IMG/VR virus record: IMGVR_UViG_3300017963_000188
Span: 62,001 to 126,000 of that record
DNA length: 64,000 nucleotides
Reading direction: 5' to 3' (one strand)
The notes below the pieces were generated by a model, which was given only the letters and a program-made list of their open reading frames with translations, was not told the origin of the DNA and did not search any database. A program made the position numbers and the translations under genes. Below, piece by piece: positions 21,723-40,276 of the stretch. Within the stretch, counting starts at the first letter, position 1. Each line of letters starts with the position of its first letter.

Positions 21723-21971
21723 CTACTCCTCATATTCAATTATTGGGAATTGTTTACCTGATATGGTTTCTTCTCTCCCACATTCTTCACATCTATGGGG
21801 GTATTTTATTGGGTAGGTAGGGTAATACGTGTCCATTGGTACCATCTCTCCACCACAGTCACAAAACAGTTTAGTCTCGAAAACTTTAACTTCTCTTTTG
21901 ACTTTTTTCATGGCTCCATCCGAATGACAAGATTTGAGGTAATACTCATCAATATTTCTATCATACCTCAT
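21723..21971 (-). CDS. zinc-ribbon hypothetical protein
   Basis: CDCGGEM...YPHRCEECG. Confidence 0.65.
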   Translation of the reverse strand: MRYDRNIDEYYLKSCHSDGAMKKVKREVKVFETKLFCDCGGEMVPMDTYYPTYPIKYPHRCEECGREETISGKQFPIIEYEE

Positions 21972-23049
21972 CCCACTTAATGGCCTGAATCACTACGTCA
22001 GGATAAAGTTCTCGACTCATGATTTCAATGCACATCTCATTGATTCGTTTTCTATTTGGCTCACGAGGCAATGAGGTTGTCTTCTTCAACTCCAAGAATA
22101 GACGTTCTTTTTCAAGAGCCCATTCTTCTAGCTGTTCAAATGACCAGGCCCCTTGACCAATAGTCATGAGTTCTTTTGCGTCAGGACGACGTACAATGAC
22201 CCCTTTACCAGTAAGGATTTCTTCACCCATCCTGATGAGCCTTACTAGATTTGTAGCGTGTTTACAATCATATCCAAACTTAGCTTCTAGTTCAGCTCGT
22301 TTTGGGTTCCTATTTTTCTTCCAGTTCTGGTAGCTATTCCACTCATTAATAGCATTCTGATATTGACGTTCCCTGGACATGGCCTCAATGAAGTTGTCAG
22401 AACAACCTGTTAGCTTCTGAATCTCAGCCCAGTTTTGTTCGTCCCCAGGATCAAAACTCTGCAAAAGACCAACTGTATTTACTTCTCGAAGTTCCTCCAG
22501 AGTCTCATCACTGAGTCTAGCTTCCTCAATAGATCCTTTCAGAATGTGGTTCAGCACATAGAAGAAAGCTCCCATATGGTCACGGCTCACAAGCTTGTGA
22601 GTCTCAGGAAGACCATAGGTTCCACGTTCTGGCTTTGTCTTTGGTGGGTTCAAAAGCCAGTTTCGGTGCCTTCTGATACGTTTAAGCTGTGAGAAGGCAT
22701 AGCCCAAATAGCTGCTACCCATCTTTGAGGAAAGGAACAAATCCCTGTGGTCTCTGATCAGCTTTCCTGTGTCTGTCATGGTCACGACATCAGAGTCTTC
22801 ACAGTACAGAATCTCAAAGCTAGAGGGGTTAGCTGCAAGAGCCATGTTACAGAATTTCTTCAGATCCCACAACACTCGGTCAGGTTCCTTGATTTCTTTC
22901 TGCTCAAATCTCTGGAGACATCCAAGATAATATTGAATTGGAGCCAGAGCAATACCCCTGAAATCCTCATCAGAGTCTGGTCTGCTGGTCCCATAAGCAT
23001 GGGACCCAAACCATGTTTCGTATATAATTTTCAAGTCTTTTAGATCCAT
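21961..23049 (-). CDS. Pol-beta superfamily nucleotidyltransferase (RlaP/YcgL-like)
   Basis: GSHAYGTSRPDSDEDFRG, YDCKHATNLVRL. Confidence 0.88.
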   Translation of the reverse strand: MDLKDLKIIYETWFGSHAYGTSRPDSDEDFRGIALAPIQYYLGCLQRFEQKEIKEPDRVLWDLKKFCNMALAANPSSFEILYCEDSDVVTMTDTGKLIRDHRDLFLSSKMGSSYLGYAFSQLKRIRRHRNWLLNPPKTKPERGTYGLPETHKLVSRDHMGAFFYVLNHILKGSIEEARLSDETLEELREVNTVGLLQSFDPGDEQNWAEIQKLTGCSDNFIEAMSRERQYQNAINEWNSYQNWKKNRNPKRAELEAKFGYDCKHATNLVRLIRMGEEILTGKGVIVRRPDAKELMTIGQGAWSFEQLEEWALEKERLFLELKKTTSLPREPNRKRINEMCIEIMSRELYPDVVIQAIKWDEV

Positions 23050-25297: not shown

Positions 25298-25588
25298 TTG
25301 AATATTTTGGAGATCAAAATGCCTAATTGCATGGGTATTATGTACGACAATGATGTGCCTGATGGTGATTCATGCTGGGTAGTTGTTCAAGGCATTGCTG
25401 AAGTTCTATTGCAAGATTGGGCTAAGGTATCGGACACACAAAATGGTAGAGCCGATATCACGAATCTATTACCTCCAGGGGGTACTATTGTAGCTTTAGA
25501 AGATCATCTATCTGAGATAGGGCATTGTCTTGAATCAAAAACGGCAGGGGTCGATGTTTTGGCTAAATGTATGATTCACTTCCTCTAG
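25298..25588 (+). CDS. hypothetical protein, possibly truncated structural-protein fragment
   Basis: CWVVVQGIAEVLL...EIGHCLES motif; start uncertain. Confidence 0.45.
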   Translation: MNILEIKMPNCMGIMYDNDVPDGDSCWVVVQGIAEVLLQDWAKVSDTQNGRADITNLLPPGGTIVALEDHLSEIGHCLESKTAGVDVLAKCMIHFL

Positions 25589-27780
25589 AGATTGACAGTT
25601 TCTTCACCTAGATCGAATGTGAATGATATACCATCAACTTCTAGAGTAGTTTCATCTCTGGACTCAAATTCATCAAACCATTTTTTGCCCAAGATAACAG
25701 CAAACTTTGTCTCCTGGATCTGTGACCTGATCCCCAACATGGTCTTCTGTAGACCCTTAATGGTTTCATCAAACCATTTAGTCTTAGTTTCAGTGGAGCT
25801 GAGCTTGCTCTTTGAAGCATCGTACAGATTGATACCCTCTTCAACTAGGTACTCTACTGGAGTTCGGCTCTTCCCTACTGCAATCTTGTCCATCACCTTT
25901 TTCACAGTGGGGAGGCTCGACATCTTGGCAATCTTGATCTTGAATGCCTTGGCAATATATTGGTCAGATGCTTCAGCAGTCTCCATAGGAGGTTGATACA
26001 ATCCACCCTTCTTGAGATTGATACCATTTGCTTCCAGAAAAGCAATCTGGTCATCATTGTACTCTGTAGTTTCAACCTTCTGTTCTCCGATCTCTTCATT
26101 CTTAAGCCATTTCAGAGCCTTGATCTGACCTTTCAATTTCTGCTCTTCCATAGACAACTTGCAAAGATCTGTTGCTGAGGTTCGACCAGTAGCAATCTTT
26201 CTGTTAATTGCTGGGAGACCAGAGACATCAATAGCGTAAACTCCAGAGTTCTTGAAATCATCATCAGTTACGATACCTTTGTTCTTTAGCTCTAGATAGG
26301 TCTTCTCAGAAGTCTTTACATAGAACTTCTTGATGTGAACCCTCCCATCTTTGATGAAGGTGTAATTTCTGAACACAAAAGTATTGAAGTATTCTGGAAG
26401 TTCAAGATCAGAACCTGTCTTTCCCTCTACTTCTTTGAGATGTACCACACCCTTGATACGTGTCTGGACATTGAGATTCAATCGACTTGAATGCCATACC
26501 AATTGGTTGAATGGACATTGAATATCCTTGTCAGCCATGAACTTGGGATAATCACCCTTGGTCTTAGTAGGAACTCCAATCTTCTCATAATGGAAATTCT
26601 CATGGTATGGATAGAATGAAGCCTCATCATCATTGACTAGGATACCAAGAAGATCAAAAGCACAAAAAGCATCATCAGGGGGTAGATAATTGGCATCTCG
26701 ACCTTCAATGAATCTTTCACTGATATCCTGAAGTCCTTTATTGATGACATCTTCAGCTTGACCATACTCTTCAATTGTGAAAGCATTGGTCAAAGAATCT
26801 ACTACCTTCTTATCTCCAACCTTACCAATAAACTCAAGAGCAAGGTCAGTCTTTGCTTGTTGAGTCAGAACGAGAGCAGCAGCATAAAGTCCTTTACCAT
26901 ACTTGTTGCCAGTATCTGCAAAGTCGATATCATCAATGTTGACACGCTTCCAGCTCTTCTTGTTGGGCTTCTCATTTGACACATAAAATACAGAAGTGCC
27001 TCGACCTTTTTGTGGACTAATATACAACTTACCATCATCATCTAGTCCATAGAGCATCACACCTTGATCTGAAACAGTGAATACTGCCAGTGGATTTTCT
27101 ACCAAAGATTCCACTTCCTGTTTCGGTTCCTGTATTTCAGAGAGCTTCACAAGTCGTGTAATACTATCTGAGTATTCATTGACCATTGTGCTATGGATAA
27201 GAAGAGCACCAAGTTTCTCAGCCATTTGAGCCATGAGTTCCTTGTTGTAGTAGTACCCATAACCGATGAACATAGCACTGTGAATCTTGCCCTTGATCTT
27301 ATTGATAGCTTCAAAGATACTCTCAATCTCTCTTCTATAATTCCTGACAACTGGATATCCATCTGTAAAAAAATGAAGAGAAAAAGTATCAGACATGATT
27401 GAGAGATCTTCAATGACAGTGCTACTATTGTGAAGAATCTCTGAAAAACAGGTTGTATTCCTAACTGAACTATTCTTTCTGATAGCCCGTTCCAAGGTAT
27501 CGTAATCAGCTTCATCACTGATTTTGAATCCCTTGATGATGAAATTGAAATCCCCCTCCCCACTAAACCACCCAAGACTGAGAGTATCCCCCTTTGGCAG
27601 TTTCTTGGAAAGAATCATAAGTTGTTCACATAGGCCAGAAAGAGTGTAATACATGGAACCTGACCTGTCATAGATCCAAATATGATTGACAGGCTCTCTC
27701 TTTTCAACTGTTGTGACCTTGGACTTTACTTCTTGATGGACTAAACACATCTCGTCTGTGATTGGTACATAACTCGGCAT
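25585..27780 (-). CDS. vWA domain protein
   Basis: YDRSGSM MIDAS, FFTDG; 731 aa. Confidence 0.85.
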   Translation of the reverse strand: MPSYVPITDEMCLVHQEVKSKVTTVEKREPVNHIWIYDRSGSMYYTLSGLCEQLMILSKKLPKGDTLSLGWFSGEGDFNFIIKGFKISDEADYDTLERAIRKNSSVRNTTCFSEILHNSSTVIEDLSIMSDTFSLHFFTDGYPVVRNYRREIESIFEAINKIKGKIHSAMFIGYGYYYNKELMAQMAEKLGALLIHSTMVNEYSDSITRLVKLSEIQEPKQEVESLVENPLAVFTVSDQGVMLYGLDDDGKLYISPQKGRGTSVFYVSNEKPNKKSWKRVNIDDIDFADTGNKYGKGLYAAALVLTQQAKTDLALEFIGKVGDKKVVDSLTNAFTIEEYGQAEDVINKGLQDISERFIEGRDANYLPPDDAFCAFDLLGILVNDDEASFYPYHENFHYEKIGVPTKTKGDYPKFMADKDIQCPFNQLVWHSSRLNLNVQTRIKGVVHLKEVEGKTGSDLELPEYFNTFVFRNYTFIKDGRVHIKKFYVKTSEKTYLELKNKGIVTDDDFKNSGVYAIDVSGLPAINRKIATGRTSATDLCKLSMEEQKLKGQIKALKWLKNEEIGEQKVETTEYNDDQIAFLEANGINLKKGGLYQPPMETAEASDQYIAKAFKIKIAKMSSLPTVKKVMDKIAVGKSRTPVEYLVEEGINLYDASKSKLSSTETKTKWFDETIKGLQKTMLGIRSQIQETKFAVILGKKWFDEFESRDETTLEVDGISFTFDLGEETVNL

Positions 27781-27801: not shown

Positions 27802-28011
27802 TTATGCTTGACAAGCAATGGCTGCATTTGCAGTCATCACCGCTTCTCGAATCTTGCGGATCGCTACATCCTGATCCTCACCTGGAGGGGTGAGCCGATG
27901 AACAGTTAGGGCAAATGTCTTGGCTGCTTCTCTCAGTTCGTTGTATTTTGGGATTTGGTCTTTGCTCGGTGGGTGATAGGTGAATAGATGTTCTACAGTC
28001 TTCTCGTCCAT
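27802..28011 (-). CDS. Acb2/Tad1-like hairpin (nucleotide-signal sponge) protein
   Basis: FTYHPP...Y..LRE.A...AIRKIREAVMTANAAIA; AGGAG SD before ATG 28011. Confidence 0.75.
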   Translation of the reverse strand: MDEKTVEHLFTYHPPSKDQIPKYNELREAAKTFALTVHRLTPPGEDQDVAIRKIREAVMTANAAIACQA

Positions 28012-28206
28012 GTGTTTCTCCTTGTTCCCAATCTTGTATCCATTTATCAAAGAATCTATCTTCTGGAAAGATATGATTCAAAAAATATGGTTCTTGTTCC
28101 CTCAGTTCTCGTTCATTATGTGTAGTCATATGTGATCCCTCCAGGCAGACTATACCAGTTTTAATTTTTTTACCAAAAATCTTGACTTGAGTATAGAAAT
28201 ATAGTT

Positions 28207-28881
28207 ATGATTCTGAACATGGAATTGTCAAAAGAACATATGCTAGCTACATTTGGTCGAAATGATTCAAAGCTATTTTTTGAATCTGGTCAGAAATCTC
28301 TAGATCAAATCAAATCACTAGTTAAAGATAAAGAGATAAAGGATGTTCTAGATTGGGGCTGTGGCTTGGGGAGAGTTCTGAAATTTTGGGGTCCTGAAGT
28401 ACATAGACATGGTTGTGATATAAACAAAGAGTATCTGAAACTGGCTCGTAAGAATTGTGATAACAGAGGTGATTTCTACGCTTGCAATTCCATGCCCCCC
28501 ACGAAGTACGATGATAAATCGTTTGACCTTATTTATGGATGCTCTGTGCTGACACATCTCGACTTTGAATCTCAGAAAATTTGGTCTAAAGAACTCAAGA
28601 GAATATTGAAGCCAGATGGTATGGCTATACTCACGTTTGATTCAAGGAATTTTAATCGTGCTATGTTCCGTGGAAAAGAAGACCTGATCAAAGACAGATA
28701 CCAGACAGTACACTTATTTGAAGATGACTTTTTCTTATCCCATAAACGAGATGGTATATTATGGGTGATCCAGTCCCCAGGTACTATTGTATTAAACTTC
28801 CCACAATTTAAAATTGAATTCCATCATGGTTTGAAGATTTTCCACGGTCAGCAAACAGCAGTATTCACACTACCTAAATGA
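28207..28881 (+). CDS. class I SAM-dependent methyltransferase
   Basis: VLDWGCGLGR, GCDIN, FDLIYGCSVLTHL. Confidence 0.88.
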   Translation: MILNMELSKEHMLATFGRNDSKLFFESGQKSLDQIKSLVKDKEIKDVLDWGCGLGRVLKFWGPEVHRHGCDINKEYLKLARKNCDNRGDFYACNSMPPTKYDDKSFDLIYGCSVLTHLDFESQKIWSKELKRILKPDGMAILTFDSRNFNRAMFRGKEDLIKDRYQTVHLFEDDFFLSHKRDGILWVIQSPGTIVLNFPQFKIEFHHGLKIFHGQQTAVFTLPK

Positions 28882-30240: not shown

Positions 30241-30326
30241 TGGTGGGTGAGGAGGGACTCGAACCCTCAAGCCCGAAGGCACAGGAACCTAAATCCTGCG
30301 TGTCTACCAAGTTCCACCACTCACCC
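30241..30326 (-). tRNA. trnL: tRNA-Leu(UAG)
   Basis: cloverleaf, loop TTTAGGT, long variable arm, CCA. Confidence 0.95.
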
Positions 30327-30373
30327 AGCTTGCATCTCACCCAGCTTGCATCTCATCCAGCTTGCATCTCACC
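30320..30373. repeat. 16-bp tandem repeat (3.4 copies) overlapping tRNA-Leu 5' end
   Basis: CTCACCCAGCTTGCAT at 30320, 30336, 30352 (1 mismatch), partial 30368. Confidence 0.9.
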
Positions 30374-30531
30374 ACATCTGCCCGTTTCTTTGCAGCCTCT
30401 CTTTTTGCTTTTTCCTCTGCTTCTTTTTTCCTAACCATCTCCTTATGAGCATCACTTTCAAGATGGTCCTTAAGAGCTGATTCTCTCTTGAAACGTCTCA
30501 TACAAAGACTGCAAACAAACTTTGGAGGCAT
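30337..30531 (-). CDS. C2H2 zinc-finger small protein
   Basis: FVCSLCMRRF...LKDHLESDAH. Confidence 0.7.
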   Translation of the reverse strand: MPPKFVCSLCMRRFKRESALKDHLESDAHKEMVRKKEAEEKAKREAAKKRADVVRCKLDEMQAG

Positions 30532-30556
30532 CTTATCTCCTTCCTATGTTCTAAGG

Positions 30557-30583
30557 TTGTATACTGGACAGATTTGAATTTTT
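30557..30583 (-). promoter_or_regulatory. class A promoter
   Basis: AAAAAT-N11-CAGTATACAA. Confidence 0.55.
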
Positions 30584-30605
30584 GAAGGGATTTTTTGAAA
30601 GGTCA

Positions 30606-31433
30606 TTAGTCGATCCAGCTAACACCTTCCATTCGACCTTGATTGGATTCAGTGTTAGCAATGACTTTACGCCATTGTCTGATCTTAAGGGTTTTATGGT
30701 CCACATGCCTGATATTGCCCCTGACAAACACTTCTGGACGCTGACGCATGGGAAAGCCGTGACTCAAGGGGGTCCCTCCAAGCACTACCAGTTCCTCAGC
30801 AATGTGAGGGTTTCCACCAGCACGACCCGCATGGGCTCCAATGCTTTCCTTACGTTTCATCAGACCCATTTCCACAGCCTTTTCGATTTCTTTCTTCTCA
30901 GTATCTGTGGTGTTGAGGAAGAACCACTCCCCTTGCCTGAAGGTCCTCCCTTTTTGCTTCCCTTCTGCTGTCCATACAGTGGGGGCTTTGAGGCAGTTGT
31001 GTGCATCCCTGACCGTACTCACAGCTTTGGGGAGCTGAGCAATGAAGAGCTGTCGTTCATCCACTCCCATCAAGAAATGACGTTTGTTTTCTGGGGTGTA
31101 TTCCCGAACAACCCAATGCTTTTTGGTTTCCCGGATCGTATTCTTGGGTCTATCAGGGATACGAGACTTGTAGATCAGAGTCTCAAAGGGCCTACGTTTT
31201 TCATGGACCATCAACACAAGTTGACCCTTCTCTGCATCAGTACCCTGGACCAAGACCCGATTGGAATCATGGCCAGGATAAATCCTGAAGATTTCGGTAC
31301 GACGATTGCCCTTGATACGACGGTCAATATCCATACCGAAAACATCCTCTCCACCCGTACCACGAGTGAAAGGAGTGTTGGTAACTTCCACTTTGAGTCC
31401 TGCTCTCTCGAAACCTTTGACCAAATTTTCCAT
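30606..31433 (-). CDS. hypothetical protein (RQGEWFF motif)
   Basis: 275 aa; visibly higher GC than flanks. Confidence 0.8.
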   Translation of the reverse strand: MENLVKGFERAGLKVEVTNTPFTRGTGGEDVFGMDIDRRIKGNRRTEIFRIYPGHDSNRVLVQGTDAEKGQLVLMVHEKRRPFETLIYKSRIPDRPKNTIRETKKHWVVREYTPENKRHFLMGVDERQLFIAQLPKAVSTVRDAHNCLKAPTVWTAEGKQKGRTFRQGEWFFLNTTDTEKKEIEKAVEMGLMKRKESIGAHAGRAGGNPHIAEELVVLGGTPLSHGFPMRQRPEVFVRGNIRHVDHKTLKIRQWRKVIANTESNQGRMEGVSWID

Positions 31434-31494
31434 GGTACCATCTCCATTCTAGAAGTAACCACTCTAGAATTATACCAAGGGGTTATTTTTTTGG

Positions 31495-33450
31495 TTATTG
31501 ATCTAGAACAGACCTGATCTTTTTTGAGATTTCACTGAGACTGAAAGGCTTTTGAATAAATCCATCACAACCTTTTTCCAACACATATGAAGCTTTCCCA
31601 TTGATGTTGTATCCACTCATCAAGACAACTTTCACTTTTGGGTTTATCTTCTTCAGAGTGTCATATATCTCTGGACCCCCAATTCCTGGCAGCACCATAT
31701 CTAACAATATCAAGTCGATACTGTCTTGATGGTTCTTATAGAAATCAATAGCTTTTAAACCATCTTTTTCAGGATAAACCGTATATCCTATAGTACTGAG
31801 AAGTCTAGTAGCTGTTTTTATGATAATATCTTCATCATCTATCAACAATATACATTCTGATCCTATCTCTAACTGATCATCCTCTATTTTATTTTCAAAT
31901 AAGATCTCTTCAGCTCTGGGGAGATACACATTTACGGTAGTCCCTTCTCCTTCAACACTATGTAGAGAAATATCCCCCTCATGATTTTTGATGATACCAT
32001 ATGCTGAAGATAAGCCAAGACCAGAACCACGTCCTACTTCTTTGGTTGTGTAGAACGGATCAAAGGCTCGTTCTATTGTTTTATTACTCATCCCACACCC
32101 AGTATCTGTCACAGATAACTTGATATAATCACCAGGTTTTAAATGAAGAGATCCTATTTCAGATACTGATATATTTGAAGTAGTAATATAAAGATCACCT
32201 CCTGTTGGCATAGCTTGACTAGCATTGACAAACAGGTTCATAAGAACTTGTTCTATCTGGCCGGGATCTGCACTGACACTCCAAATATCACTCTTCAGAC
32301 TTTTATGCACAACAATATCTTTCCTAGTTCTGCTAAATATACCAATGCTATTGTTGACTAATACATTTATGTTTGAGGTTATGATATTTGAGGTGTCTAT
32401 GCCACGACGGGCAAAGCTAAGAAGTTGTGCAGTCAGATCAGCAGCTCTCTTACCACAAATCTCTATATCTATAAGTTCTTGGCTAGTCTTCCCTTCTTTC
32501 AAACGAAGTAAAGTAGCATTTGATAGTATACCCATCAAAAGGTTGTTGAAATCATGTGCTATTCCACCAGCCAAGGTTCCAATAGCTTCCATTTTCTGAG
32601 CATGGTAAAATTGAGTTTCAAGAGCTTTTCGATCTGTGATGTCCTCTCCATAACCAATACTATATTTTATATTACCCTCGTGATCATACAACACTGAATT
32701 GTGCCAAGCTATGAGTCTTTCTTCTCCAGTCTTTGTCAGTACAGGATTTTCATAGTATTCAGATAATTGTATTTCACCATTTATCAGATTATTAAAGACT
32801 TGTTTTACTTGAGGCACATATCTTTTTGGTAAGAAGTTTTCAAACCAGTTTTTACCAATTATATGCCTACAATCATCAGAATTATAACCTAATATCTGAC
32901 ATCCTTTCTTGTTTATAAGAGCAACATTTTGATTAGAATCAATTGTTACAAAAATCACATTAGCTACATTAAGGAACTCTTTCACTGTATTTTTTTCCAT
33001 CTTTAATTCTTTTTCTACTTCATATTGTTTAGTCACATCTACGATCTGTATTATTAGACCACCTTTAAAAAATGATGTGTGAAAAGAAGCTACTTTCTCA
33101 GCACCATCTTTACACGTTATTCTGAATACAGTGCAATCCTGTCCCTCACCCTTAAGAGCTTGTGTCACATTTTTCCAAACAAAATCTCTATATTCTCCAT
33201 CAGGATATAACCTTTCTACCCATTCTCCTACATTTTTGATTTCATCAGTAGTGTACCCAATGAATTTCTCTAGAGCTTTATTGAAAAGTACAATAGAACC
33301 ATCCGACCGTCCTATAGCCGTTGGTATTGGACTTTGAAGCACAATTAACGGAAAGCATAATTCAGAGTCTAGGATATCAACATCATATTCTGGAGATCCC
33401 CTAATATCTGCTAGAGCTTTCGCTTCTTTGTCCGACATTCCTTTGATCAT
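31495..33450 (-). CDS. PAS-PAS hybrid sensor histidine kinase/response regulator
   Basis: two PAS; AHDFNN H box, N/G1/F/G2 boxes; receiver LLIDDE...LLDMVLP...KPF. Confidence 0.95.
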   Translation of the reverse strand: MIKGMSDKEAKALADIRGSPEYDVDILDSELCFPLIVLQSPIPTAIGRSDGSIVLFNKALEKFIGYTTDEIKNVGEWVERLYPDGEYRDFVWKNVTQALKGEGQDCTVFRITCKDGAEKVASFHTSFFKGGLIIQIVDVTKQYEVEKELKMEKNTVKEFLNVANVIFVTIDSNQNVALINKKGCQILGYNSDDCRHIIGKNWFENFLPKRYVPQVKQVFNNLINGEIQLSEYYENPVLTKTGEERLIAWHNSVLYDHEGNIKYSIGYGEDITDRKALETQFYHAQKMEAIGTLAGGIAHDFNNLLMGILSNATLLRLKEGKTSQELIDIEICGKRAADLTAQLLSFARRGIDTSNIITSNINVLVNNSIGIFSRTRKDIVVHKSLKSDIWSVSADPGQIEQVLMNLFVNASQAMPTGGDLYITTSNISVSEIGSLHLKPGDYIKLSVTDTGCGMSNKTIERAFDPFYTTKEVGRGSGLGLSSAYGIIKNHEGDISLHSVEGEGTTVNVYLPRAEEILFENKIEDDQLEIGSECILLIDDEDIIIKTATRLLSTIGYTVYPEKDGLKAIDFYKNHQDSIDLILLDMVLPGIGGPEIYDTLKKINPKVKVVLMSGYNINGKASYVLEKGCDGFIQKPFSLSEISKKIRSVLDQ

Positions 33451-33514
33451 AAGAGCCCCTGATCTTTTTCGTACTATACAACTTATTTTTAGATTATATA
33501 ATAAAATAATTGAT

Positions 33515-33602
33515 TGGTGCCGGGGGAGGGAATCGAACCCTCACGAGATTTCTCTCATCGGATTTTGAATCCGACGTGTCTACCTAGTTCCACCACCCCG
33601 GC
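33515..33602 (-). tRNA. trnL: tRNA-Leu(CAA)
   Basis: stem TCGGA/TCCGA, loop TTCAAAA, CCA. Confidence 0.95.
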
Positions 33603-33606
33603 TATA

Positions 33607-33692
33607 TGGTGCTGGAGGAGGGATTTGAACCCTCAATCCCTTACGGGCATAGCGTCCTGAACGCTACGTGTATACCGTTCCACCACTCCAGC
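33607..33692 (-). tRNA. trnL: tRNA-Leu(CAG)
   Basis: loop TTCAGGA, CCA. Confidence 0.95.
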
Positions 33693-33700
33693 AAATTGTT

Positions 33701-33788
33701 TGGTGCCGGAAGAGGGAATCGAACCCCCACGGGACAAGTCCCACTAGGACCTAAACCTAGCGTGTCTGCCTAGTTCCACCATTCCGGC
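33701..33788 (-). tRNA. trnL: tRNA-Leu(UAG)
   Basis: loop TTTAGGT, CCA. Confidence 0.95.
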
Positions 33789-33789
33789 C

Positions 33790-33875
33790 TGGTGTCTGGG
33801 GAGGGGATCGAACCCTCAAGCCTTTCGGCACAGCGACCTCAACGCTGCGTGTCTACCTAATTTCACCACCCAGAC
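33790..33875 (-). tRNA. trnL: tRNA-Leu(GAG)
   Basis: loop TTGAGGT, CCA. Confidence 0.95.
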
Positions 33876-33877
33876 TT

Positions 33878-33962
33878 TGGTGCTCAGGGAGGGATTCGAA
33901 CCCTCAAGCCTTTCGGCACAGGATTCTTAGTCCTGCGTGTATACCAGTTCCACCACCCGAGC
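33878..33962 (-). tRNA. trnL: tRNA-Leu(AAG)
   Basis: stem CAGGA/TCCTG, loop CTAAGAA, CCA. Confidence 0.93.
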
Positions 33963-33969
33963 ATATTTT

Positions 33970-34056
33970 TGGTGCTGGGGGAGGGAATCGAACCCTCACG
34001 ACACAAGGCCAGGGGATTTTAAGTCCCCAGTGTCTACCTAATTCCACCACCCCAGC
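33970..34056 (-). tRNA. trnL: tRNA-Leu(UAA)
   Basis: loop CTTAAAA, CCA. Confidence 0.95.
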
Positions 34057-34076
34057 ACAACACCTAAAATTTCAAA

Positions 34077-34244
34077 GATCAAACCTATCCCCTGCACACA
34101 GTACAGTAGTCTAGATCTGTACTGTGAGGATTATTAAATTACAAGAGTAACAGGGAAAGGGATAGATCGGTGGAAACGATTTCGGTTTTGGCAACGATGT
34201 CAATTCCCGTTTTCATCTCTCACCTCACCGTGTCGATTCACGGT
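34077..34244 (-). ncRNA. candidate structured leader/ncRNA upstream of Leu array
   Basis: nested stems 34085-91/34159-65 and 34097-106/34117-126; hairpin 34227-44; class-A-like promoter near 34250. Confidence 0.4.
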
Positions 34245-34297
34245 ACACTTAATATACAGTAGAGAAATCTTTTTGGCTAGTCTTTTTTTGATCTAGG

Positions 34298-35224
34298 CTA
34301 AAAAATACTTCCGTCTTCATTAAATTCATATTCATTGACCATGATATTTTCATCTACATTCTCATCAGCCATCAACCAATCATATTCTTTTTCAAGAGCT
34401 TGGTAGTAATCTTGAGCATAGTATCGAGCTTGTTCAAGACCCCATTCATTGAGTTCTTCTACTTCTCTTTCAAGAGCCTCATCAAACTTGTCTACTTCAT
34501 CTTCTGACCAGTCATCAGCATCTTCATAATTATCTACAGATGGAGCACGGATGTCGTCACCGTGCATTGTATTTGAATGATAGTAATGCCCAGAATGAGT
34601 GATGTTGAGGTGATAATCCTCATAGTCTTCACCACCCATTTCTTCCATGAGCTTTACAAAAGAAGGGAATTGCTTTTCAGCACCTTCACTATGAATGAGC
34701 TTGAGAAGGTCTACAGAACCTTCCCAGCTTGCACCGTCACCCTGACTAGCAAAACCAGAAAAGTACATCTTGTCAATGTCAAAACCCTTTTTCTCACCAT
34801 CTTCCTTGAACTGCTCTTCAAGAAAATCCCACCACTCGTAATCAAGGGCTCCATCACGCCACCATTCACGAGCCTTATCTTTAGCTTGATCGTCAAGTTC
34901 GTCAAACTTGTAGACCTCTTTTTCAACGGTTCTTGGGAGAGCTACTTTTCTTTGTGACTGATATCTATACATGTTCGACCTCTTTGCTGCCTTGTTGAAA
35001 TACTTTACTGCCTCATCTTCTTTCTTGAAGTAATGACCCCAATAGAAACCATTGCCTTTAGACCATCTCCAGACACCCCAAGGTGATGCTGAAGAGTCAG
35101 AAAAACCTAAGGCATACCATTCCTGACCATCCTTACGTTTCACATTCCTGATATCGTATGCTCCAGCACTGGTTTCCATTCCTGGGGGTAACTGCACTCC
35201 TGCTGCTTTTTTATATCTATACAT
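34298..35224 (-). CDS. two-module hypothetical protein, each module beginning MYRY
   Basis: 308 aa; second module VYKFDELDDQAKDKAREW...NEYEFNEDG; internal SD+ATG at 34972. Confidence 0.85.
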   Translation of the reverse strand: MYRYKKAAGVQLPPGMETSAGAYDIRNVKRKDGQEWYALGFSDSSASPWGVWRWSKGNGFYWGHYFKKEDEAVKYFNKAAKRSNMYRYQSQRKVALPRTVEKEVYKFDELDDQAKDKAREWWRDGALDYEWWDFLEEQFKEDGEKKGFDIDKMYFSGFASQGDGASWEGSVDLLKLIHSEGAEKQFPSFVKLMEEMGGEDYEDYHLNITHSGHYYHSNTMHGDDIRAPSVDNYEDADDWSEDEVDKFDEALEREVEELNEWGLEQARYYAQDYYQALEKEYDWLMADENVDENIMVNEYEFNEDGSIF

Positions 35225-35233
35225 TTCAATCTC

Positions 35234-35590
35234 CTAGAAAGCACCTGGTTGAAACCAATTTCCAAAATCATGCTTATCAGTGACTTTAAGATGATCTCCC
35301 TCACTTACCTTAGGGAGCTTTTTACGAAGCCTGATACTCTTCATCTCTGACCTTTTACGAGCATTCTGCATCACAATATCAGCTTCTTCTTGATTATCCA
35401 CAGCAATAGCTATATAGCTTCGACCAGGAGCTTTACCCCACCCACTCATAAAGCTGTCGATCATGATGACGTAATTCCAAGGTTGGGTCTTTTTCTTACG
35501 AACATCTTCAATTTCCTGTCCTCTGATTGATCTCCAGGCAACATTCTCTGCTATTTTACTGAAATCCATGATATGTCTCCTATGTACCAA
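35234..35590 (-). CDS. hypothetical protein (FSKIAENVAWRSI leader)
   Basis: 118 aa; MIDSFMSGWG motif. Confidence 0.75.
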   Translation of the reverse strand: MVHRRHIMDFSKIAENVAWRSIRGQEIEDVRKKKTQPWNYVIMIDSFMSGWGKAPGRSYIAIAVDNQEEADIVMQNARKRSEMKSIRLRKKLPKVSEGDHLKVTDKHDFGNWFQPGAF

Positions 35591-35609
35591 ACAATCTACT
35601 CTAGATAGA

Positions 35610-35626
35610 TTATAAATGATTTATAA
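35610..35626. promoter_or_regulatory. palindromic class B site between divergent genes
   Basis: TTATAAAT-G-ATTTATAA. Confidence 0.5.
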
Positions 35627-35650
35627 TTATATCAAATAAGGAGATATGTC

Positions 35651-35941
35651 ATGCAAATCAGTGCTCAATTAAGAAGACTAGCCAAAGAAATATATCAAGT
35701 GCGGTTAAGCCAAGATCTGATAGATCGTTTAGAAGATTGGGTTTTTGGAACCACAGGTTATGTATCTATAATTTTCAATAATTCTAGAAATTACAAAGAC
35801 GTACCTCTGCAATTAGTTCTAGATACAATATCTGAACTTGAGGGGCCTCTTTATCTAAAGAGCCCCACCCTATCTCTATACGAAAAAGATGAGATAAAAG
35901 ATTTGATCCGTCGATTGAAGAGCTATGTACCTATGCAGTAG
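35651..35941 (+). CDS. hypothetical protein with SAQLRRLAKEI leader
   Basis: 96 aa, AAGGAG SD. Confidence 0.7.
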   Translation: MQISAQLRRLAKEIYQVRLSQDLIDRLEDWVFGTTGYVSIIFNNSRNYKDVPLQLVLDTISELEGPLYLKSPTLSLYEKDEIKDLIRRLKSYVPMQ

Positions 35942-36113
35942 GTTGTGATTTCCTTTTATCCACCACAATCTCTTCTTGACCTTCTTTGACATCCCAGTTA
36001 GCTTGCTTAGCCAAGTTCATCAAAGTTTCTTTTGAGATCCGAATCCCATTACCAAGCTGACCTTCTTTCCAGGTAGTTTGAGATTCTCTTCTTTTCTTTT
36101 TGTCCTTACCCAT
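35931..36113 (-). CDS. small basic protein
   Basis: 60 aa, AAGGAG SD. Confidence 0.55.
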   Translation of the reverse strand: MGKDKKKRRESQTTWKEGQLGNGIRISKETLMNLAKQANWDVKEGQEEIVVDKRKSQPTA

Positions 36114-36353
36114 CTATATCTCCTTAATAGCTTTAACTCCTGGGAAAAGTCGGACATTGCTAGACCCAAGAATCCTTGCAGAACCGAGAAGGACCCATTC
36201 CCTTCTCAAATCGTGGCATTTCTTAATCAACGGTCTGAATCGATAGAATTTGGGGGATCGATAATAACACATTTCATGGGACAATTCTTGAACCAGATAT
36301 TCATATTGTTCCACGAGAGTCTCAAGGGAAGTGATGCACTCAGCATCTTTCAT
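36114..36353 (-). CDS. hypothetical protein
   Basis: 79 aa, TAATG-coupled. Confidence 0.55.
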   Translation of the reverse strand: MKDAECITSLETLVEQYEYLVQELSHEMCYYRSPKFYRFRPLIKKCHDLRREWVLLGSARILGSSNVRLFPGVKAIKEI

Positions 36354-36931
36354 TAGATACTTTTCCCACCGTGACGATATGACCGACCTTTGTTGTATTC
36401 TTTTTTAGCTTCGAGAGCTTCTGCGATACGTAAACCTTTGGCAAGAGCCATATCCATCATTCTAATGATAGTATCGGCAAACTCTACTTCCTGGTAACTA
36501 AATTTTGGAAGTTGATCATTGGGAGGGTCACCCTTCCTAAGACCTTCAAGAGCTTCTGACAATTCACTATGCATCAGAGCAATCATCTCAGCATCATTCC
36601 TAGTTGTAGCTACATTCCAGAGTGTGTGGATGATTTCTTTCTGGTTGTCAATGGTATGACCACATTTTCTGCATTTGAGTTGTAAAAAATCTTCAAGGTA
36701 AGTCCCATCTGGATTTTGTTCTAGAACATATTCATGTGGTTTTCCATCTTTTTCACACCTACCAAACCGAATAGTCTTTTCCCACCAGCCTTTTTCCACT
36801 GCGGTATCATGTACTTCTTTAGCCGTTTCATTCCATGCATCTACAAAACTCATATCTATTCCTTTCTCTAGGGTTGATTTTTTAAGTCCATGTGGATTGT
36901 AAAAAGCAATCCCTATCTCAGGATGTGCCAT
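36353..36931 (-). CDS. MazG-like NTP pyrophosphatase with Cys/His insertion
   Basis: ALMHSELSEALE, EFADTIIRMMD, YNKGRSYRHGGK; start may be MSF at 36853. Confidence 0.8.
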   Translation of the reverse strand: MAHPEIGIAFYNPHGLKKSTLEKGIDMSFVDAWNETAKEVHDTAVEKGWWEKTIRFGRCEKDGKPHEYVLEQNPDGTYLEDFLQLKCRKCGHTIDNQKEIIHTLWNVATTRNDAEMIALMHSELSEALEGLRKGDPPNDQLPKFSYQEVEFADTIIRMMDMALAKGLRIAEALEAKKEYNKGRSYRHGGKSI

Positions 36932-37277
36932 ATTTCTTATCCAGGAATTTGTTGATATTTTCAGCAGAATACCCTAACAATAGACCCATCAAGGCATCAC
37001 CTTCTAAATCCCCTATTGCCACAGTCTCTTCAAATAGATTTTTCACCCATGGGTATCTAGCCACATAAACTCCTGCTGCGGTACCAAAATCATCAGTTAT
37101 GAATTTGTCACGGAATATTTGGACCTCATGTGTGGATTCAAGATTATTTTTGGATTGCTCTATTTGAGCCCATCCTTCAGGACTTACTTCACTTGGATTT
37201 GATAGTAGGGATACACCTCTAGAGACTCGGTAACAGGCTTCTTCTAACCACCACATCCATTCATCTTCGTAACTCAT
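36918..37277 (-). CDS. hypothetical protein
   Basis: 119 aa; GLLLGYS motif. Confidence 0.65.
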   Translation of the reverse strand: MSYEDEWMWWLEEACYRVSRGVSLLSNPSEVSPEGWAQIEQSKNNLESTHEVQIFRDKFITDDFGTAAGVYVARYPWVKNLFEETVAIGDLEGDALMGLLLGYSAENINKFLDKKYGTS

Positions 37278-37552
37278 ATGTCTACTGCCTCAAACTCGAT
37301 ATGGTACGTCTCACTAACCTTGAAATGAGGACATCGTTTACACCCTATATGATATTCTTGTCTGTGCCCATCTGGACCTATCCCACCCCATCGTTGTCTC
37401 ACCATATCATGCCCAATGAAAAAACATCTGACCCTTCTGAAGAAATCTCCTAGTCTTCTTTTCAATGGGAATTTCCCATGCTGGATCGCATACATAAGTG
37501 TTTCAACATCTTCAGACATGGATCGTTTTGCAAAATATGTTTTTGCTTTCAT
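37274..37552 (-). CDS. hypothetical protein
   Basis: 92 aa; CFFIGHD...CKRC. Confidence 0.6.
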   Translation of the reverse strand: MKAKTYFAKRSMSEDVETLMYAIQHGKFPLKRRLGDFFRRVRCFFIGHDMVRQRWGGIGPDGHRQEYHIGCKRCPHFKVSETYHIEFEAVDI

Positions 37553-37568
37553 ATCTTCATGTCTCCCA

Positions 37569-37805
37569 TCAAATATTTACATCTTCTCGACGATGAACCT
37601 CAACAAGTTCAGCTTCGAGTTTACCACCATAAAATGACATGTTAGATCCTACAGAGGAATTCTTATTGGCTTCAGCTACGTTACCCCATTCTTTCATAGC
37701 TTTTTTCCATGCAGCTTTGGGTGATTTCGCCTCGAATTCTTGACCATTCCAAATGGTCTTGATGCTTTCCCCACCACTCGTAAACTTGATTCGATACATA
37801 CCCAT
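37569..37805 (-). CDS. hypothetical protein
   Basis: 78 aa, GGAGG SD. Confidence 0.6.
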   Translation of the reverse strand: MGMYRIKFTSGGESIKTIWNGQEFEAKSPKAAWKKAMKEWGNVAEANKNSSVGSNMSFYGGKLEAELVEVHRREDVNI

Positions 37806-37815
37806 TGGAGTCCTC

Positions 37816-38538
37816 CTAAAATAGTTCCAGTTGCACTGGTATTCTAGGTTCCTTTCCTTTGATATATAATCTCTTATATCGACCAGAAGGAACCATCACA
37901 ATGTTGTCGATCACAATACCCTCTTGGATATATTTTGACAAACATAGACGTGCCGTACTGGTCGTTCTATAATGATGCTTGATATTATCTATAGCCTCTT
38001 TGAGATGGCAGCCTGGATGTAGGCTTACAAATCTAACAAGGTCTGAAACAGTTAATTGGAAGGGAGTAAAATACTTGTTCTGGTCATTACCTGCTTCTGC
38101 CCATGTCTTATGTTCTTCTCGTAAATTTTTCTTGAGCAACCAATGGACCTTTCTACGAAACTTTGGTTCCATAGATTCTATAACTTGATTATTTTTTCTA
38201 ACGTTTATTTCTATAAGTCCAATTCCAAAATGTTTACATAACGATGCTTCAAAGTCTCTTCGACCTGAGCTGTAAGACCTCCATTGGCCTTTTTTCTTTG
38301 GGACTGCTATTGAAACTCTATGGGCATATCTTGTCCAGAACATGGCTTGCTCAAGCACTTTGAGACTGAAACTGGTCTTCACCTCAATGACCCATAATAC
38401 AGGGTTCATCTTGGCTACAATGTCAGCTCTTGAACTGGTTCTGCTAGGATCAATCTCTACTTCTTGGTAAACTTCCCAATGGTGGTCCTGAAGCCAGTCC
38501 ACAACTGACTTTGCAATGTCAGATTCTTTTATTTTCAT
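37816..38538 (-). CDS. PD-(D/E)xK nuclease-like (MmcB-like) protein
   Basis: VYQEV...RADIVA...VIEVKTS. Confidence 0.7.
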   Translation of the reverse strand: MKIKESDIAKSVVDWLQDHHWEVYQEVEIDPSRTSSRADIVAKMNPVLWVIEVKTSFSLKVLEQAMFWTRYAHRVSIAVPKKKGQWRSYSSGRRDFEASLCKHFGIGLIEINVRKNNQVIESMEPKFRRKVHWLLKKNLREEHKTWAEAGNDQNKYFTPFQLTVSDLVRFVSLHPGCHLKEAIDNIKHHYRTTSTARLCLSKYIQEGIVIDNIVMVPSGRYKRLYIKGKEPRIPVQLELF

Positions 38539-39551
38539 TACTTGAGTTTGTTAGGAACGATCTGGGAATGCATCCAATGAGTAGAGGTTTGCACATGACC
38601 TTTTCTTACATATTTGGCAGTTGATTTTCTGAAATCCCGGTATCGAAATTCATCAACCACTCTGATTACATATCCTTCACATTCATCGTTGTCATAAGTT
38701 TCCTGGTACAAATTCTTAATGGTCTCTTCATCCCATATCCCTCTATAAAGAACCGGTACTGTTTCAAGACCTAAGAGTTGACACCATTCTACTGTGTCAT
38801 CCCAGGATAGGCAACGATTATTTTCATCCCAGATCGAGAATGTCATGAAATAACTGGGAAGATTCTCGTAGCTTATGGAATGAGCTGCATATAAATTCTC
38901 TCCACAAATTCTCCAATCTCTGGGGATCTCATAAGCCACTGAAGCATGGAGTGACTTCACCCAATGCCTCGATTCATGGTCCTTCGAGGTGATAGAACGA
39001 GCATGGATGTGACCTTGGTACATGGTAGTATTCTCACCATCCATCTTAATGGTCACTACAACTTCTTTACCTTCAAATTGGGAAGTATCCTGAAGGATCT
39101 TATCATCATCAGAAGCTCCAGGACTCCATGGTAAATGATAGGTCCTTGGATATTTATAGAACCCTATGAACGTGATCAGAGGATTTGCAGATCGAATCAT
39201 TTTCTCAGATTCAGAATATAATTCACCATGAAACCTGACCTTATGAGTCTTATCAGTACAGGGATTACCCCACTTGTCATACTCACCTTTTTTAAGATGA
39301 GGGGGTAGTAAGATAGTCTCGATACCAGCAGCTTCCCTAACCTCATTGGTGCTGACCGAAGTATCCTCAGCTTTGATGTGACAATCAGAACAAAGGGCAG
39401 CACCATTATCTAGATAGTATCCACCATCATCCCAAAGTTTACGTTCCATGATGTGGTGAGCATCTGAGGCAGGAGCCTGACAGATCACGCACTTGTGACC
39501 ATCTCGGTCCATTACGTTCTGTCTGAACTGGTCTCTAGTAAGCAGCATCAC
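38538..39551 (-). CDS. HNH domain fused to RNA ligase family domain
   Basis: RDGHKCVIC..DAHH..LCSDCH; KYPRTYHL, KMDGEN, GENL, EGYVIR, AKYVR. Confidence 0.85.
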   Translation of the reverse strand: MMLLTRDQFRQNVMDRDGHKCVICQAPASDAHHIMERKLWDDGGYYLDNGAALCSDCHIKAEDTSVSTNEVREAAGIETILLPPHLKKGEYDKWGNPCTDKTHKVRFHGELYSESEKMIRSANPLITFIGFYKYPRTYHLPWSPGASDDDKILQDTSQFEGKEVVVTIKMDGENTTMYQGHIHARSITSKDHESRHWVKSLHASVAYEIPRDWRICGENLYAAHSISYENLPSYFMTFSIWDENNRCLSWDDTVEWCQLLGLETVPVLYRGIWDEETIKNLYQETYDNDECEGYVIRVVDEFRYRDFRKSTAKYVRKGHVQTSTHWMHSQIVPNKLK

Positions 39552-39603
39552 ATCCTCCTGTACCTATATACTGAAAAAGTTTGATTCTCTAAAGTATATA
39601 TTT

Positions 39604-39631
39604 AAAAATCTGTTTTGTTTCGGTATATGAT
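39604..39631 (+). promoter_or_regulatory. class A promoter cassette
   Basis: AAAAATCTG-N8-CGGTATA-N7-AGGAGGTG. Confidence 0.7.
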
Positions 39632-39646
39632 AGTAGGAGGTGAGAT

Positions 39647-39811
39647 ATGAAAGCATGGGGAATTGAACATCTAGAAGAATTGAAGCAGGCCCAACAGGTC
39701 CAACCACAGCAACTCCAATTGGAACTTGATGTGCCTACCTATCCTGAGTACGATAATTCTGAAGAGAAATTTGATTCAGAAGTGAGTTTTGAGGTTGATT
39801 TCTCGATCTAA
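39647..39811 (+). CDS. 54-aa acidic protein (below ORF-track cutoff)
   Basis: MKAWGIEHLEELKQ...; cassette and AGGAGG SD. Confidence 0.6.
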   Translation: MKAWGIEHLEELKQAQQVQPQQLQLELDVPTYPEYDNSEEKFDSEVSFEVDFSI

Positions 39812-40143: not shown

Positions 40144-40247
40144 TTGTATCTCCTTATTCAGGTTTGGTCCTCTCTAGACAAAAGTTAAAAAAAGATAACA
40201 AATCTAGATCTTCTATGAAAAAGTCACTTTTCTAGATTTTTTAATTC

Positions 40248-40276
40248 AAAAATCTGGATCATTTCAGTATAGAACT
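40248..40276 (+). promoter_or_regulatory. class A promoter cassette
   Basis: AAAAATCTG-N8-CAGTATA-N7-AGGAGGTG. Confidence 0.7.

What the first reader, a model, noticed from the sequence alone, without database searches (positions are those of the whole stretch)
27802..28011. Acb2/Tad1-like signal-sponge protein
The 69-aa helical hairpin matches my recollection of the Acb2/Tad1 family, which sequesters CBASS/Thoeris signals. With the Acb1-like enzyme, the phage may both degrade and sequester signals.
Basis: partly seen in the sequence, partly recalled or inferred. Interest (0 to 1): 0.6.

Follow-up and report, generated by a model that had tools for sequence, protein, structure and literature searches.

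The report
Short Acb2-family immune-signal sponge gene
A 69-residue gene in a 358-kb environmental jumbo phage is an unannotated member of the known Acb2 family of phage "sponge" proteins, which soak up the nucleotide alarm signals of bacterial CBASS and Thoeris immunity; it is a sound annotation, not a new kind of system.

Summary
The ORF is real: window 27802..28011, minus strand, 69 aa, with AAGGAG 6 nt before its ATG. It evolves under purifying selection (dN/dS 0.12 against a 75%-identical ortholog in a sister phage).

It matches Pfam PF24729 (Acb2/Tad1 hairpin) end to end at 61 bits (cut-off 27). The solved sponge T4 Vs.4 scores 71 bits on the same model.

The AF2 model (pLDDT 94) has a short N-terminal helix, a loop and a two-helix hairpin. 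Its best PDB match is Vs.4 bound to cGAMP, though this is not statistically separable from generic hairpins. Its best viral matches are Acb2/Tad1-hairpin proteins (TM up to 0.92).

Two alignment methods place Y12 and R27 on the Tyr and Lys that bind cyclic dinucleotides in PaMx33 Acb2 (Y11, K26). The cyclic-trinucleotide residues are not conserved. A dimer co-fold passes its controls (0.58 vs 0.00).

The same subfamily is listed as Acb2 in Hadary et al. 2025. Its closest tested member (Acb2_27, about 55% identical by my manual count) inhibited type I Thoeris and a 3'3'-cUA CBASS.

It is Acb2-type, not Tad1-type. The "Acb1-like" companion is only a sub-threshold 2H phosphoesterase 14 kb away. 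Ligand specificity is untested.

Verdict: a new member of a known kind, of low to moderate interest.

The parts
27802..28011 (-). acb2-family CDS, 69 aa plus stop (P0001)
   Evidence: ORF and translation. PF24729 at 61.1 bits, profile 1-58/58. phrog_1454 at 63.8 bits. dN/dS 0.12 against the L085 ortholog.
28018..28023 (-). Shine-Dalgarno AAGGAG, 6 nt before the ATG at 28011
   Evidence: Read directly from the sequence. Upstream of the ATG, the substitution pattern against L085 fits the ORF A frame rather than the acb2 frame, so the alternative TTG start at 28050 is unlikely.
27967..27984 (-). Codons F10-T11-Y12-H13-P14-P15, the conserved N-terminal segment predicted to line the ligand pocket
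   Evidence: F10, H13 and P15 are invariant and Y12 is at least 90% conserved in 54 homologs. Y12 aligns with Y8 of T4 Vs.4, which corresponds to Y11 of PaMx33 Acb2, the base-stacking Tyr. My manual alignment places H13 on H5 of Acb2_43, which contacts 3'cADPR; that step is inference.
27931..27933 (-). Codon R27, an invariant basic residue at the position of the phosphate-binding Lys of Acb2
   Evidence: R27 is invariant. It aligns with K23 of T4 Vs.4, which corresponds to K26 of PaMx33, by both hhalign and MAFFT. The role of K26 comes from Cao et al., PMC10312549.
27814..27954 (-). The two antiparallel helices of the hairpin (residues 20-40 and 45-66) with the TPPGED turn
   Evidence: AF2 model with pLDDT 97-99 in this part. 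The predicted homodimer interface runs along residues 22-68.
27878..28129 (-). Upstream ORF A (83 aa; GGAGGG at 28137-28142, 7 nt before its ATG). Its 3' 134 nt overlap acb2 out of frame. It may be a leader or a translationally coupled small gene; its function is unknown.
   Evidence: The first ~37 codons are conserved in L085 with mostly synonymous or conservative changes (dN/dS 0.19). The overlapping tail shows dN/dS of about 6, so it is not selected in this frame. No Pfam or PHROG family matches.

Best explanation
The gene encodes a minimal Acb2-family sponge. By analogy with solved Acb2 proteins, the 69-aa protomer (N-terminal segment plus helical hairpin) assembles into a homo-oligomer, most likely a hexamer. 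Pockets formed where the N-terminal segments of two protomers meet (F10, Y12, H13, R27) would bind and sequester host immune second messengers. The likely ligands are 3'3' cyclic dinucleotides made by CBASS CD-NTases and/or 3'cADPR made by Thoeris TIR proteins. Sequestration keeps the effectors inactive, so the phage escapes abortive infection. Shown here: the gene, its selection, family membership, the fold, positional conservation of the dinucleotide-binding Tyr and basic residue, and model-level support for self-association. Inferred: the hexameric state, which ligand(s) it binds, and the in vivo effect. A PaMx33-type cyclic-trinucleotide pocket is not expected.
For: PF24729 matches at 61.1 bits (cut-off 27) over the whole profile. 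The positive control T4 Vs.4 scores 71.4 bits on the same model. In Foldseek against the PDB, rank 1 is 7uq2 (Vs.4 with cGAMP), and 8h2j and 8h2x (PaMx33 Acb2) are also listed. VIA-align ranks 7uq2_D first at Z 6.5 with 25% identity over 65 residues. In BFVD, 14 of the top 15 hits are Acb2/Tad1-hairpin proteins, with TM up to 0.92 and E down to 2.7e-5. hhalign and MAFFT independently map Y12 to Vs.4 Y8 and R27 to Vs.4 K23. These correspond to PaMx33 Y11 and K26, which are essential for cyclic-dinucleotide binding. The dimer co-fold scores 0.58 against a best control of 0.00. That mark was reached by 20 of 30 solved homodimers and 1 of 23 monomers. The runs agree in at least 98% of contacts and partner pLDDT is at least 90. 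Hadary et al. 2025 list this motif class among 4,204 Acb2 homologs. By my count, 6 of 9 tested members with the F-T/S-Y/H-H N-terminal motif inhibited at least one system. Acb2_27, of the same REAVMTANAAIA subclass, was plaque-assay positive against type I Thoeris and Yersinia 3'3'-cUA CBASS. The gene is an accessory gene: none of its neighbours recurs beside the homologs in 80 other viral loci.
Against: Neither phmmer nor a subfamily profile finds any Acb2 or Tad1 chain in the PDB by sequence. hhalign to Vs.4 alone gives only 4.6% probability. The monomer fold match to Acb2 (Z 6.5) is tied with unrelated helical hairpins (Z 6.4). The hexamer could not be modelled, and the reported dimer interface does not include residues 10-15. 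Three of the nine tested motif-class homologs were inactive against all seven systems. The Trp of the common Acb2 'MW' motif is Thr here (T60). The residues at the PaMx33 cA3 site (R67, T74) map to D46 and R52. The host and its defence systems are unknown.
Confidence: 0.8

Rival explanations
1. It is a true family member but does not act on CBASS or type I Thoeris. It either binds another signal (for example cyclic tri- or oligoadenylates, or a still unknown messenger) or is inactive.
For: 19 of 84 sponges tested by Hadary et al. had no activity. These include three of the nine with the same N-terminal motif class (rows 17, 37, 38). The subclass has its own invariant residues (H13, P15, R55, N62) of unknown role. 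The nearest ortholog varies at R52, T60 and A64.
Against: The closest tested relative, Acb2_27, is active on two systems. The cyclic-dinucleotide Tyr and basic residue are conserved.
Confidence: 0.12
2. It is a generic two-helix hairpin protein with an unrelated role (structural, regulatory or protein-binding), and the Pfam label misleads.
For: Monomer fold scores do not separate Acb2 from ESCRT-I, IcmR or EsxEF hairpins. There is no direct sequence hit to solved sponges.
Against: The profile match is full length at 61 bits and shares the model with Vs.4. Vs.4 also cross-hits the query's PHROG 1454. BFVD hits are family-specific. Functional residues are conserved in position.
Confidence: 0.04
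3. It is a Tad1-type sponge that binds gcADPR through a Tad1 N-terminal domain.
For: The Pfam domain is shared by Acb2 and Tad1. 7uaw (Tad1) appears at Z 4.1.
Against: The protein is 69 aa with only 10 residues before the domain. The tested Tad1 proteins are about 98-148 aa, with an N-terminal domain ahead of the hairpin. The Tad1 match covers only the hairpin.
Confidence: 0.01
4. The real product is longer: a +1 frameshift fuses the conserved upstream ORF A to the Acb2 frame.
For: The 5' part of ORF A is under selection and runs straight into acb2. The overlap arrangement is kept in the sister phage.
Against: acb2 has its own strong SD and ATG. Most homologs are 68-75 aa and start at the same place. 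No slippery site is evident. The acb2 frame has a stop 22 codons upstream of the ATG.
Confidence: 0.03

Closest known systems
Acb2_27 of Hadary et al. 2025 (bioRxiv 10.1101/2025.08.24.671296, Table S2 row 27; 76 aa, IMG/VR metagenomic phage)
   Same: It has the same subclass signature: FTYH(A/P)P, an invariant Y..(L/I)REAAK, and AIRK(V/I)REAVMTANAAIA. It is of similar length and is hairpin-only. I count about 55% identity by hand over 60 aligned positions.
   Different: It differs in the N- and C-terminal tails and the turn sequence. Acb2_27 has experimental data: plaque-assay positive against type I Thoeris and Yersinia 3'3'-cUA CBASS, not validated against E. albertii cGAMP CBASS. The window protein has none. 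I could not fetch its natural locus, so the identity was not computed with a tool.
T4 Vs.4 (Acb2; PDB 7UQ2)
   Same: It belongs to the same Pfam domain over the full profile. It is the best PDB fold match. Y8 and K23 align with Y12 and R27. An Asp sits at the position of PaMx33 R67 (T4 D61, here D46), and T4 Acb2 does not bind cA3.
   Different: Identity is only 26%. Vs.4 has a 19-residue insertion at the hairpin turn and the 'MW' motif, where this protein has 'MT'.
PaMx33 Acb2 (PDB 8H2J, 8H2X)
   Same: Helical-hairpin protomer. The match to 8h2j_A has TMq 0.67 and rmsd 2.2 A. The Y11/K26 dinucleotide pocket is conserved in position.
   Different: PaMx33 Acb2 is 94 aa, with extra N- and C-terminal elements (P90 contributes to its pocket). 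Its cA3 pocket residues R67 and T74 are not conserved here.
Acb2_43 (Hadary et al. 2025; crystal structure with 3'cADPR)
   Same: It is a short Acb2 whose N-terminal segment lines the pocket. My manual alignment puts its H5 on H13 and its K19 on R27.
   Different: Its K55 aligns with the invariant A63 here. It has N- and C-terminal beta-strands that the AF2 monomer model does not predict here.
Tad1 (PDB 7UAW)
   Same: It shares the C-terminal hairpin domain (PF24729).
   Different: The Tad1 N-terminal domain, which forms the gcADPR site, is absent here.

Membership tests
Acb2 (anti-CBASS 2 sponge family) | Sequence match to the Acb2/Tad1 hairpin profile (PF24729) above the curated cut-off and over the full length | tested here: met
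   61.1 bits against a cut-off of 27, profile 1-58/58, residues 11-67. T4 Vs.4 control: 71.4 bits.
Acb2 (anti-CBASS 2 sponge family) | Small single-domain protomer: an N-terminal segment plus two long antiparallel helices | tested here: met
   AF2 pLDDT 93.8, with helices 3-9, 20-40 and 45-66. BFVD family hits reach TM 0.92.
Acb2 (anti-CBASS 2 sponge family) | Fold similarity to solved Acb2 structures that stands clearly above unrelated folds | tested here: inconclusive
   7uq2 ranks first (Foldseek E 1.5, probability 0.75; VIA Z 6.5), but unrelated hairpins score Z 6.4.
Acb2 (anti-CBASS 2 sponge family) | Homo-hexameric interlocked assembly | tested here: inconclusive
   The dimer co-fold passes: 0.58 against a best control of 0.00, a mark reached by 20 of 30 solved homodimers and 1 of 23 monomers.
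Acb2 (anti-CBASS 2 sponge family) | Cyclic-dinucleotide pocket residues: a stacking Tyr (PaMx33 Y11) and a phosphate-binding Lys (K26) | tested here: met
   Y12 is at least 90% conserved, and R27 is invariant (a Lys-to-Arg change). The positions were mapped through Vs.4 Y8 and K23 by hhalign and MAFFT.
Acb2 (anti-CBASS 2 sponge family) | Cyclic-trinucleotide pocket residues (PaMx33 R67, T74). This is an optional feature that varies among Acb2 homologs. | tested here: not met
   The aligned residues are D46 and R52. T4 Acb2, which has D61 at the first site, does not bind cA3.
Acb2 (anti-CBASS 2 sponge family) | Binds immune nucleotide signals and rescues phage from CBASS or Thoeris | not testable with these tools
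   Only indirect evidence exists: the same-subclass Acb2_27 and other motif-class homologs are active.
Tad1 | An N-terminal domain ahead of the hairpin that forms the gcADPR site; typical length about 100-150 aa | tested here: not met
   The protein is 69 aa with 10 residues before the domain. The 7uaw match (Z 4.1) covers only the hairpin.
Acb1 (the proposed companion enzyme, window 13670..14680) | Match to the Acb1 profile PF23474 above its cut-off | tested here: not met
   20.3-20.6 bits against a cut-off of 27, covering only profile positions 68-119. The better match is to the generic 2H family PF13563 (33.2 bits). It shares PHROG 755 with T4 57B at only 28 bits, against 228 bits for 57B itself.

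The most novel reading that the evidence does not exclude
The FTYHPP...REAVMTANAAIAC subclass may be a distinct dual-specificity Acb2 lineage. It would bind both 3'cADPR and 3'3'-cUA-type dinucleotides through a pocket built around the invariant His-Pro-Pro segment (H13) as well as the canonical Tyr and basic pair. In this jumbo-phage lineage its translation may be coupled to a conserved overlapping upstream small ORF (ORF A) that tunes or partners with the sponge.
Probability: 0.15. Interest if true: 0.5.

Novelty: new member of a known kind. Interest (0 to 1): 0.25.

Why it matters
The result gives a confident functional label to an unannotated gene in a complete 358-kb environmental (sediment and seawater) jumbo phage. 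It also adds a data point on how widely minimal, roughly 70-aa Acb2 sponges are spread outside cultured phages. Members of this family can neutralise CBASS and Thoeris, and hosts can sense them in turn (the Panoptes system, PMC12657218). Their presence therefore hints that the unknown host uses nucleotide-signal immunity. The subclass has only one tested representative and no structure, so this protein or its relatives would be reasonable targets for defining how a 69-residue protomer achieves Thoeris and CBASS specificity. None of this changes current understanding of the family.

Tried and rejected
- phmmer of the protein and hmmsearch with a 54-sequence subfamily profile against all PDB chains found no Acb2 or Tad1 hit. 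The link to solved sponges therefore rests on the broader Pfam profile, fold searches and alignments.
- Megablast of 8 kb around the gene against 50,697 phage records gave no match.
- Two degenerate-pattern scans of IMG/VR for the natural locus of Acb2_27 found nothing. Its identity to the query is therefore a hand count.
Only a dimer with one 3'3'-cGAMP riding along was run, and the ligand is not scored.
- A search for conserved neighbours found none: no flanking gene recurs next to the homologs in 80 IMG/VR loci. Only the sister contig L085 shares synteny.
- The Tad2 profile finds nothing in the genome.
- Sigma-70-like promoter and terminator counts around the gene are no higher than in shuffled sequence, so I make no promoter claim.
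- The alternative TTG start at 28050 (82 aa) was rejected. Upstream of the ATG, substitutions against L085 fit the ORF A frame, not the acb2 frame.
- An assembly indel as the cause of the ORF A/acb2 overlap was rejected. Two runs' contigs are identical there, and the sister phage keeps the same frame relation.
- The large representative-protein search was not used, because the family scans had settled the question.

Full report
**Observation**

The coordinates hold an ORF on the minus strand (27802..28011). It has ATG at 28011, 69 codons and a stop. AAGGAG lies at 28018-28023, 6 nt before the ATG.

The window is bases 62001-126000 of a 358,038-bp IMG/VR virus record that CheckV rates 100% complete, so this is a jumbo phage. 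Contigs from a sediment metagenome run and a seawater metagenome run, in two different studies, reproduce bases 27000-29000 without any difference. One or both may be the source of the record.

**Is it a gene?**

The word search found 490 homologs, mostly 68-100 aa, all carrying PF24729. In an alignment of 54 of them, F10, H13, P15, R27, R55, A57, V58, A61, N62, A63 and A66 are invariant. Y12, Y23, F33, D46, R52 and others are at least 90% conserved.

A sister-phage contig (L085, 8.6 kb, found in a public run) carries a 75%-identical ortholog in conserved synteny. That synteny includes a 730-aa protein immediately downstream, a CmpB-like membrane protein, thymidylate kinase, an ABC-type ATPase and a C2H2 zinc-finger protein. 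Between the two orthologs pS is 0.61 and pN is 0.13, giving dN/dS of 0.12. The ORF is therefore a real gene under purifying selection.

**What family?**

- Pfam PF24729 (Acb2/Tad1 hairpin domain) matches residues 11-67 over the complete 58-position profile at 61.1 bits, against a cut-off of 27 (E 1.2e-16).
- As a positive control I fetched T4 vs.4, the solved Acb2 homolog, from NC_000866. It scores 71.4 bits over the same full profile.
- PHROGs places the query in phrog_1454, of unknown function. Vs.4 weakly cross-hits the same PHROG.
- NCBIfam has no model for either protein.
- Direct sequence searches of the PDB, with the protein and with a subfamily profile, do not reach any Acb2 or Tad1 chain. 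The relationship is therefore at family-profile level, not close homology.

**Structure**

AlphaFold2 gives mean pLDDT 93.8. The model has a short helix (residues 3-9), an extended loop carrying FTYHPP, and two long antiparallel helices (20-40 and 45-66).

- Foldseek against the PDB ranks 7uq2 (Vs.4 with cGAMP) first. It also lists 8h2x and 8h2j (PaMx33 Acb2; TMq 0.67, rmsd 2.2 A), but all E-values are above 1.
- VIA-align also ranks 7uq2_D first (Z 6.5, 25% identity over 65 residues). Unrelated hairpins reach Z 6.4, so the monomer fold is consistent but not discriminating.
- Against predicted viral structures, 14 of the top 15 hits are Acb2/Tad1 hairpin domain proteins, with TM up to 0.92, rmsd about 1 A and E down to 2.7e-5.
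- Tad1 (7uaw) matches only on the hairpin, at Z 4.1. The query has just 10 residues before the domain, so it lacks the Tad1 N-terminal domain. It is Acb2-type.

**Functional residues**

Cao et al. (PMC10312549) report that PaMx33 Acb2 binds cyclic dinucleotides between the N-terminal parts of two protomers. Binding uses stacking by Y11 and salt bridges from K26, both highly conserved and essential. It binds cA3 through R67 and T74, which are variable. T4 Acb2 has D61 and T68 at those positions and does not bind cA3.

hhalign and an independent MAFFT alignment both align Vs.4 Y8 with Y12 and Vs.4 K23 with R27. The Tyr-to-basic spacing of 15 residues is the same in PaMx33, T4 and the query. The trinucleotide positions map to D46 and R52, so a PaMx33-type cA3 pocket is not expected.

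Hadary et al. 2025 solved Acb2_43 with 3'cADPR. The ligand is held by the N-terminal segment (T4, H5, L6, V7) plus K19 and K55. By my manual alignment H5 falls on the invariant H13 and K19 on R27, while K55 falls on the invariant A63. That mapping is inference only.

**Oligomerisation**

A two-copy co-fold, with one 3'3'-cGAMP riding along, scored 0.58 against a best control of 0.00. That mark was reached by 20 of 30 solved homodimers and 1 of 23 monomers. The runs agree in at least 98% of contacts and partner pLDDT is at least 90.

The calibration holds only roughly here, because I used my own alignment and a ligand was present. The pass may also reflect likeness to solved complexes. The interface is an antiparallel packing along residues 22-68. 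The tool does not allow six copies, so the defining hexamer remains untested.

**Experimental precedent for this subclass**

Hadary et al. 2025 (bioRxiv 10.1101/2025.08.24.671296) collected 4,204 non-redundant Acb2 homologs by HHpred to 7UQ2 and 8H39, after selecting clusters with confident homo-oligomer predictions. Their Table S1 contains many sequences with the query's signature. In the stored part, YHPP occurs 77 times and VMTANAAIAC 25 times.

In Table S2 I count nine tested Acb2 proteins with the F-T/S-Y/H-H N-terminal motif (rows 4, 14, 17, 27, 33, 35, 37, 38, 44). Six were validated against at least one system.

Row 27 (Acb2_27, 76 aa) has the same REAVMTANAAIA helix as the query, and I count about 55% identity by hand. 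It was plaque-assay positive against B. cereus type I Thoeris (3'cADPR) and Y. aleksiciae CBASS (3'3'-cUA). It was not validated against E. albertii cGAMP CBASS, and it was negative for type II and IV Thoeris and for Pycsar. It is one of the ten Thoeris-inhibiting Acb2 proteins that the paper mentions.

**Most likely mechanism**

The phage makes a minimal Acb2 sponge that oligomerises and sequesters CBASS dinucleotides and/or Thoeris 3'cADPR. This prevents effector activation and abortive infection.

- Shown here: the gene, its selection, family membership, the fold, the positional conservation of pocket residues, and model-level self-association.
- Inferred: the hexamer, the ligand identity and the in vivo effect.

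I put 0.8 on sponge function. The ligand is open. The subclass precedent favours 3'3'-cUA-type dinucleotides and 3'cADPR.

**Context and the Acb1 claim**

The gene sits in a block of accessory genes. These include a SAM methyltransferase on the opposite strand, an ABC-type ATPase, a C2H2 zinc-finger protein, a PAS/histidine-kinase/receiver hybrid, thymidylate kinase and an RlaP-type nucleotidyltransferase. None of these neighbours accompanies the homologs in 80 other viral loci. This fits a mobile anti-defence gene.

The genome has a single PF24729 copy and no Tad2. The only Acb1-profile match in the whole genome is sub-threshold: 20.3-20.6 bits against a cut-off of 27, covering only profile positions 68-119. 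It lies in a 336-aa 2H phosphoesterase at window 13670..14680.

That protein fits the generic 2',5' RNA ligase/LigT family better (PF13563 at 33.2 bits; TIGR02258 at 31 bits against a cut-off of 65.7). It shares PHROG 755 with T4 Acb1 (57B) at only 28 bits, against 228 bits for 57B itself. A "degrade and sequester" pair is therefore possible but not established.

**Upstream ORF A**

ORF A (27878..28129, minus strand, 83 aa) has GGAGGG 7 nt before its ATG. It overlaps acb2 by 134 nt in another frame.

Its first ~37 codons are conserved in L085, with mostly synonymous or conservative changes (dN/dS 0.19). The overlapping tail is not selected in its own frame (dN/dS about 6).

It has no family match. 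It may be a leader or a translationally coupled small gene. A +1 frameshift fusion seems unlikely, given acb2's own SD and ATG and the short length of most homologs.

**Verdict**

The gene is a new member of a known, already surveyed family, with Acb2-type architecture. Novelty is low. The open points are ligand specificity, the role of the invariant His-Pro-Pro segment, and ORF A.

Noticed in passing
window 27878..28129 (-): ORF A (83 aa) lies upstream of acb2, has its own strong SD, and overlaps acb2 by 134 nt out of frame. Its first ~37 codons are conserved and under selection in the sister phage L085 (3571..3780), while the tail is not. It has no known family. It could be a leader or a translationally coupled gene.
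   Followed up: partly
window 13670..14680 (+): A 336-aa protein carries an N-terminal 2H phosphoesterase domain (PF13563 at 33 bits). It is the only Acb1-profile match in the genome, and that match is sub-threshold (20.3 bits against a cut-off of 27; phrog_755 at 28 bits).
   Followed up: partly
window 25585..27780 (-): A 731-aa protein starts 21 nt downstream of acb2 on the same strand. It matches phrog_2426 (432 bits, unknown function) and gives only faint VWA_2 and KilA-N hints. It is 76% identical and also adjacent to the acb2 ortholog in L085, but it is absent next to homologs in 80 other viral loci.
   Followed up: partly
window 30241..63801 (-): ARAGORN finds 28 tRNA genes in the window, all on the minus strand. 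They include a run of six tRNA-Leu genes (33515-34056) and a cluster at 53483-54316. This is a very large tRNA complement, typical of some jumbo phages.
   Followed up: no
window 31495..33450 (-): The phage encodes a 651-aa hybrid sensor kinase with PAS domains, HisKA, HATPase_c and a response-regulator receiver domain. This is an unusual signalling gene for a phage genome.
   Followed up: no
window 28207..28881 (+): A SAM-dependent methyltransferase (224 aa; Methyltransf_11/25) is inserted on the opposite strand just upstream of ORF A and acb2. It is absent at the corresponding place in the sister contig L085, which suggests a recent insertion.
   Followed up: partly
window 30337..30531 (-) and 21961..23049 (-): A 64-aa C2H2 (JAZ/zf-met type) zinc-finger protein, conserved in L085, and a 362-aa RlaP-family (RNA-repair-pathway) nucleotidyltransferase lie in the same accessory-gene block.
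   Followed up: no
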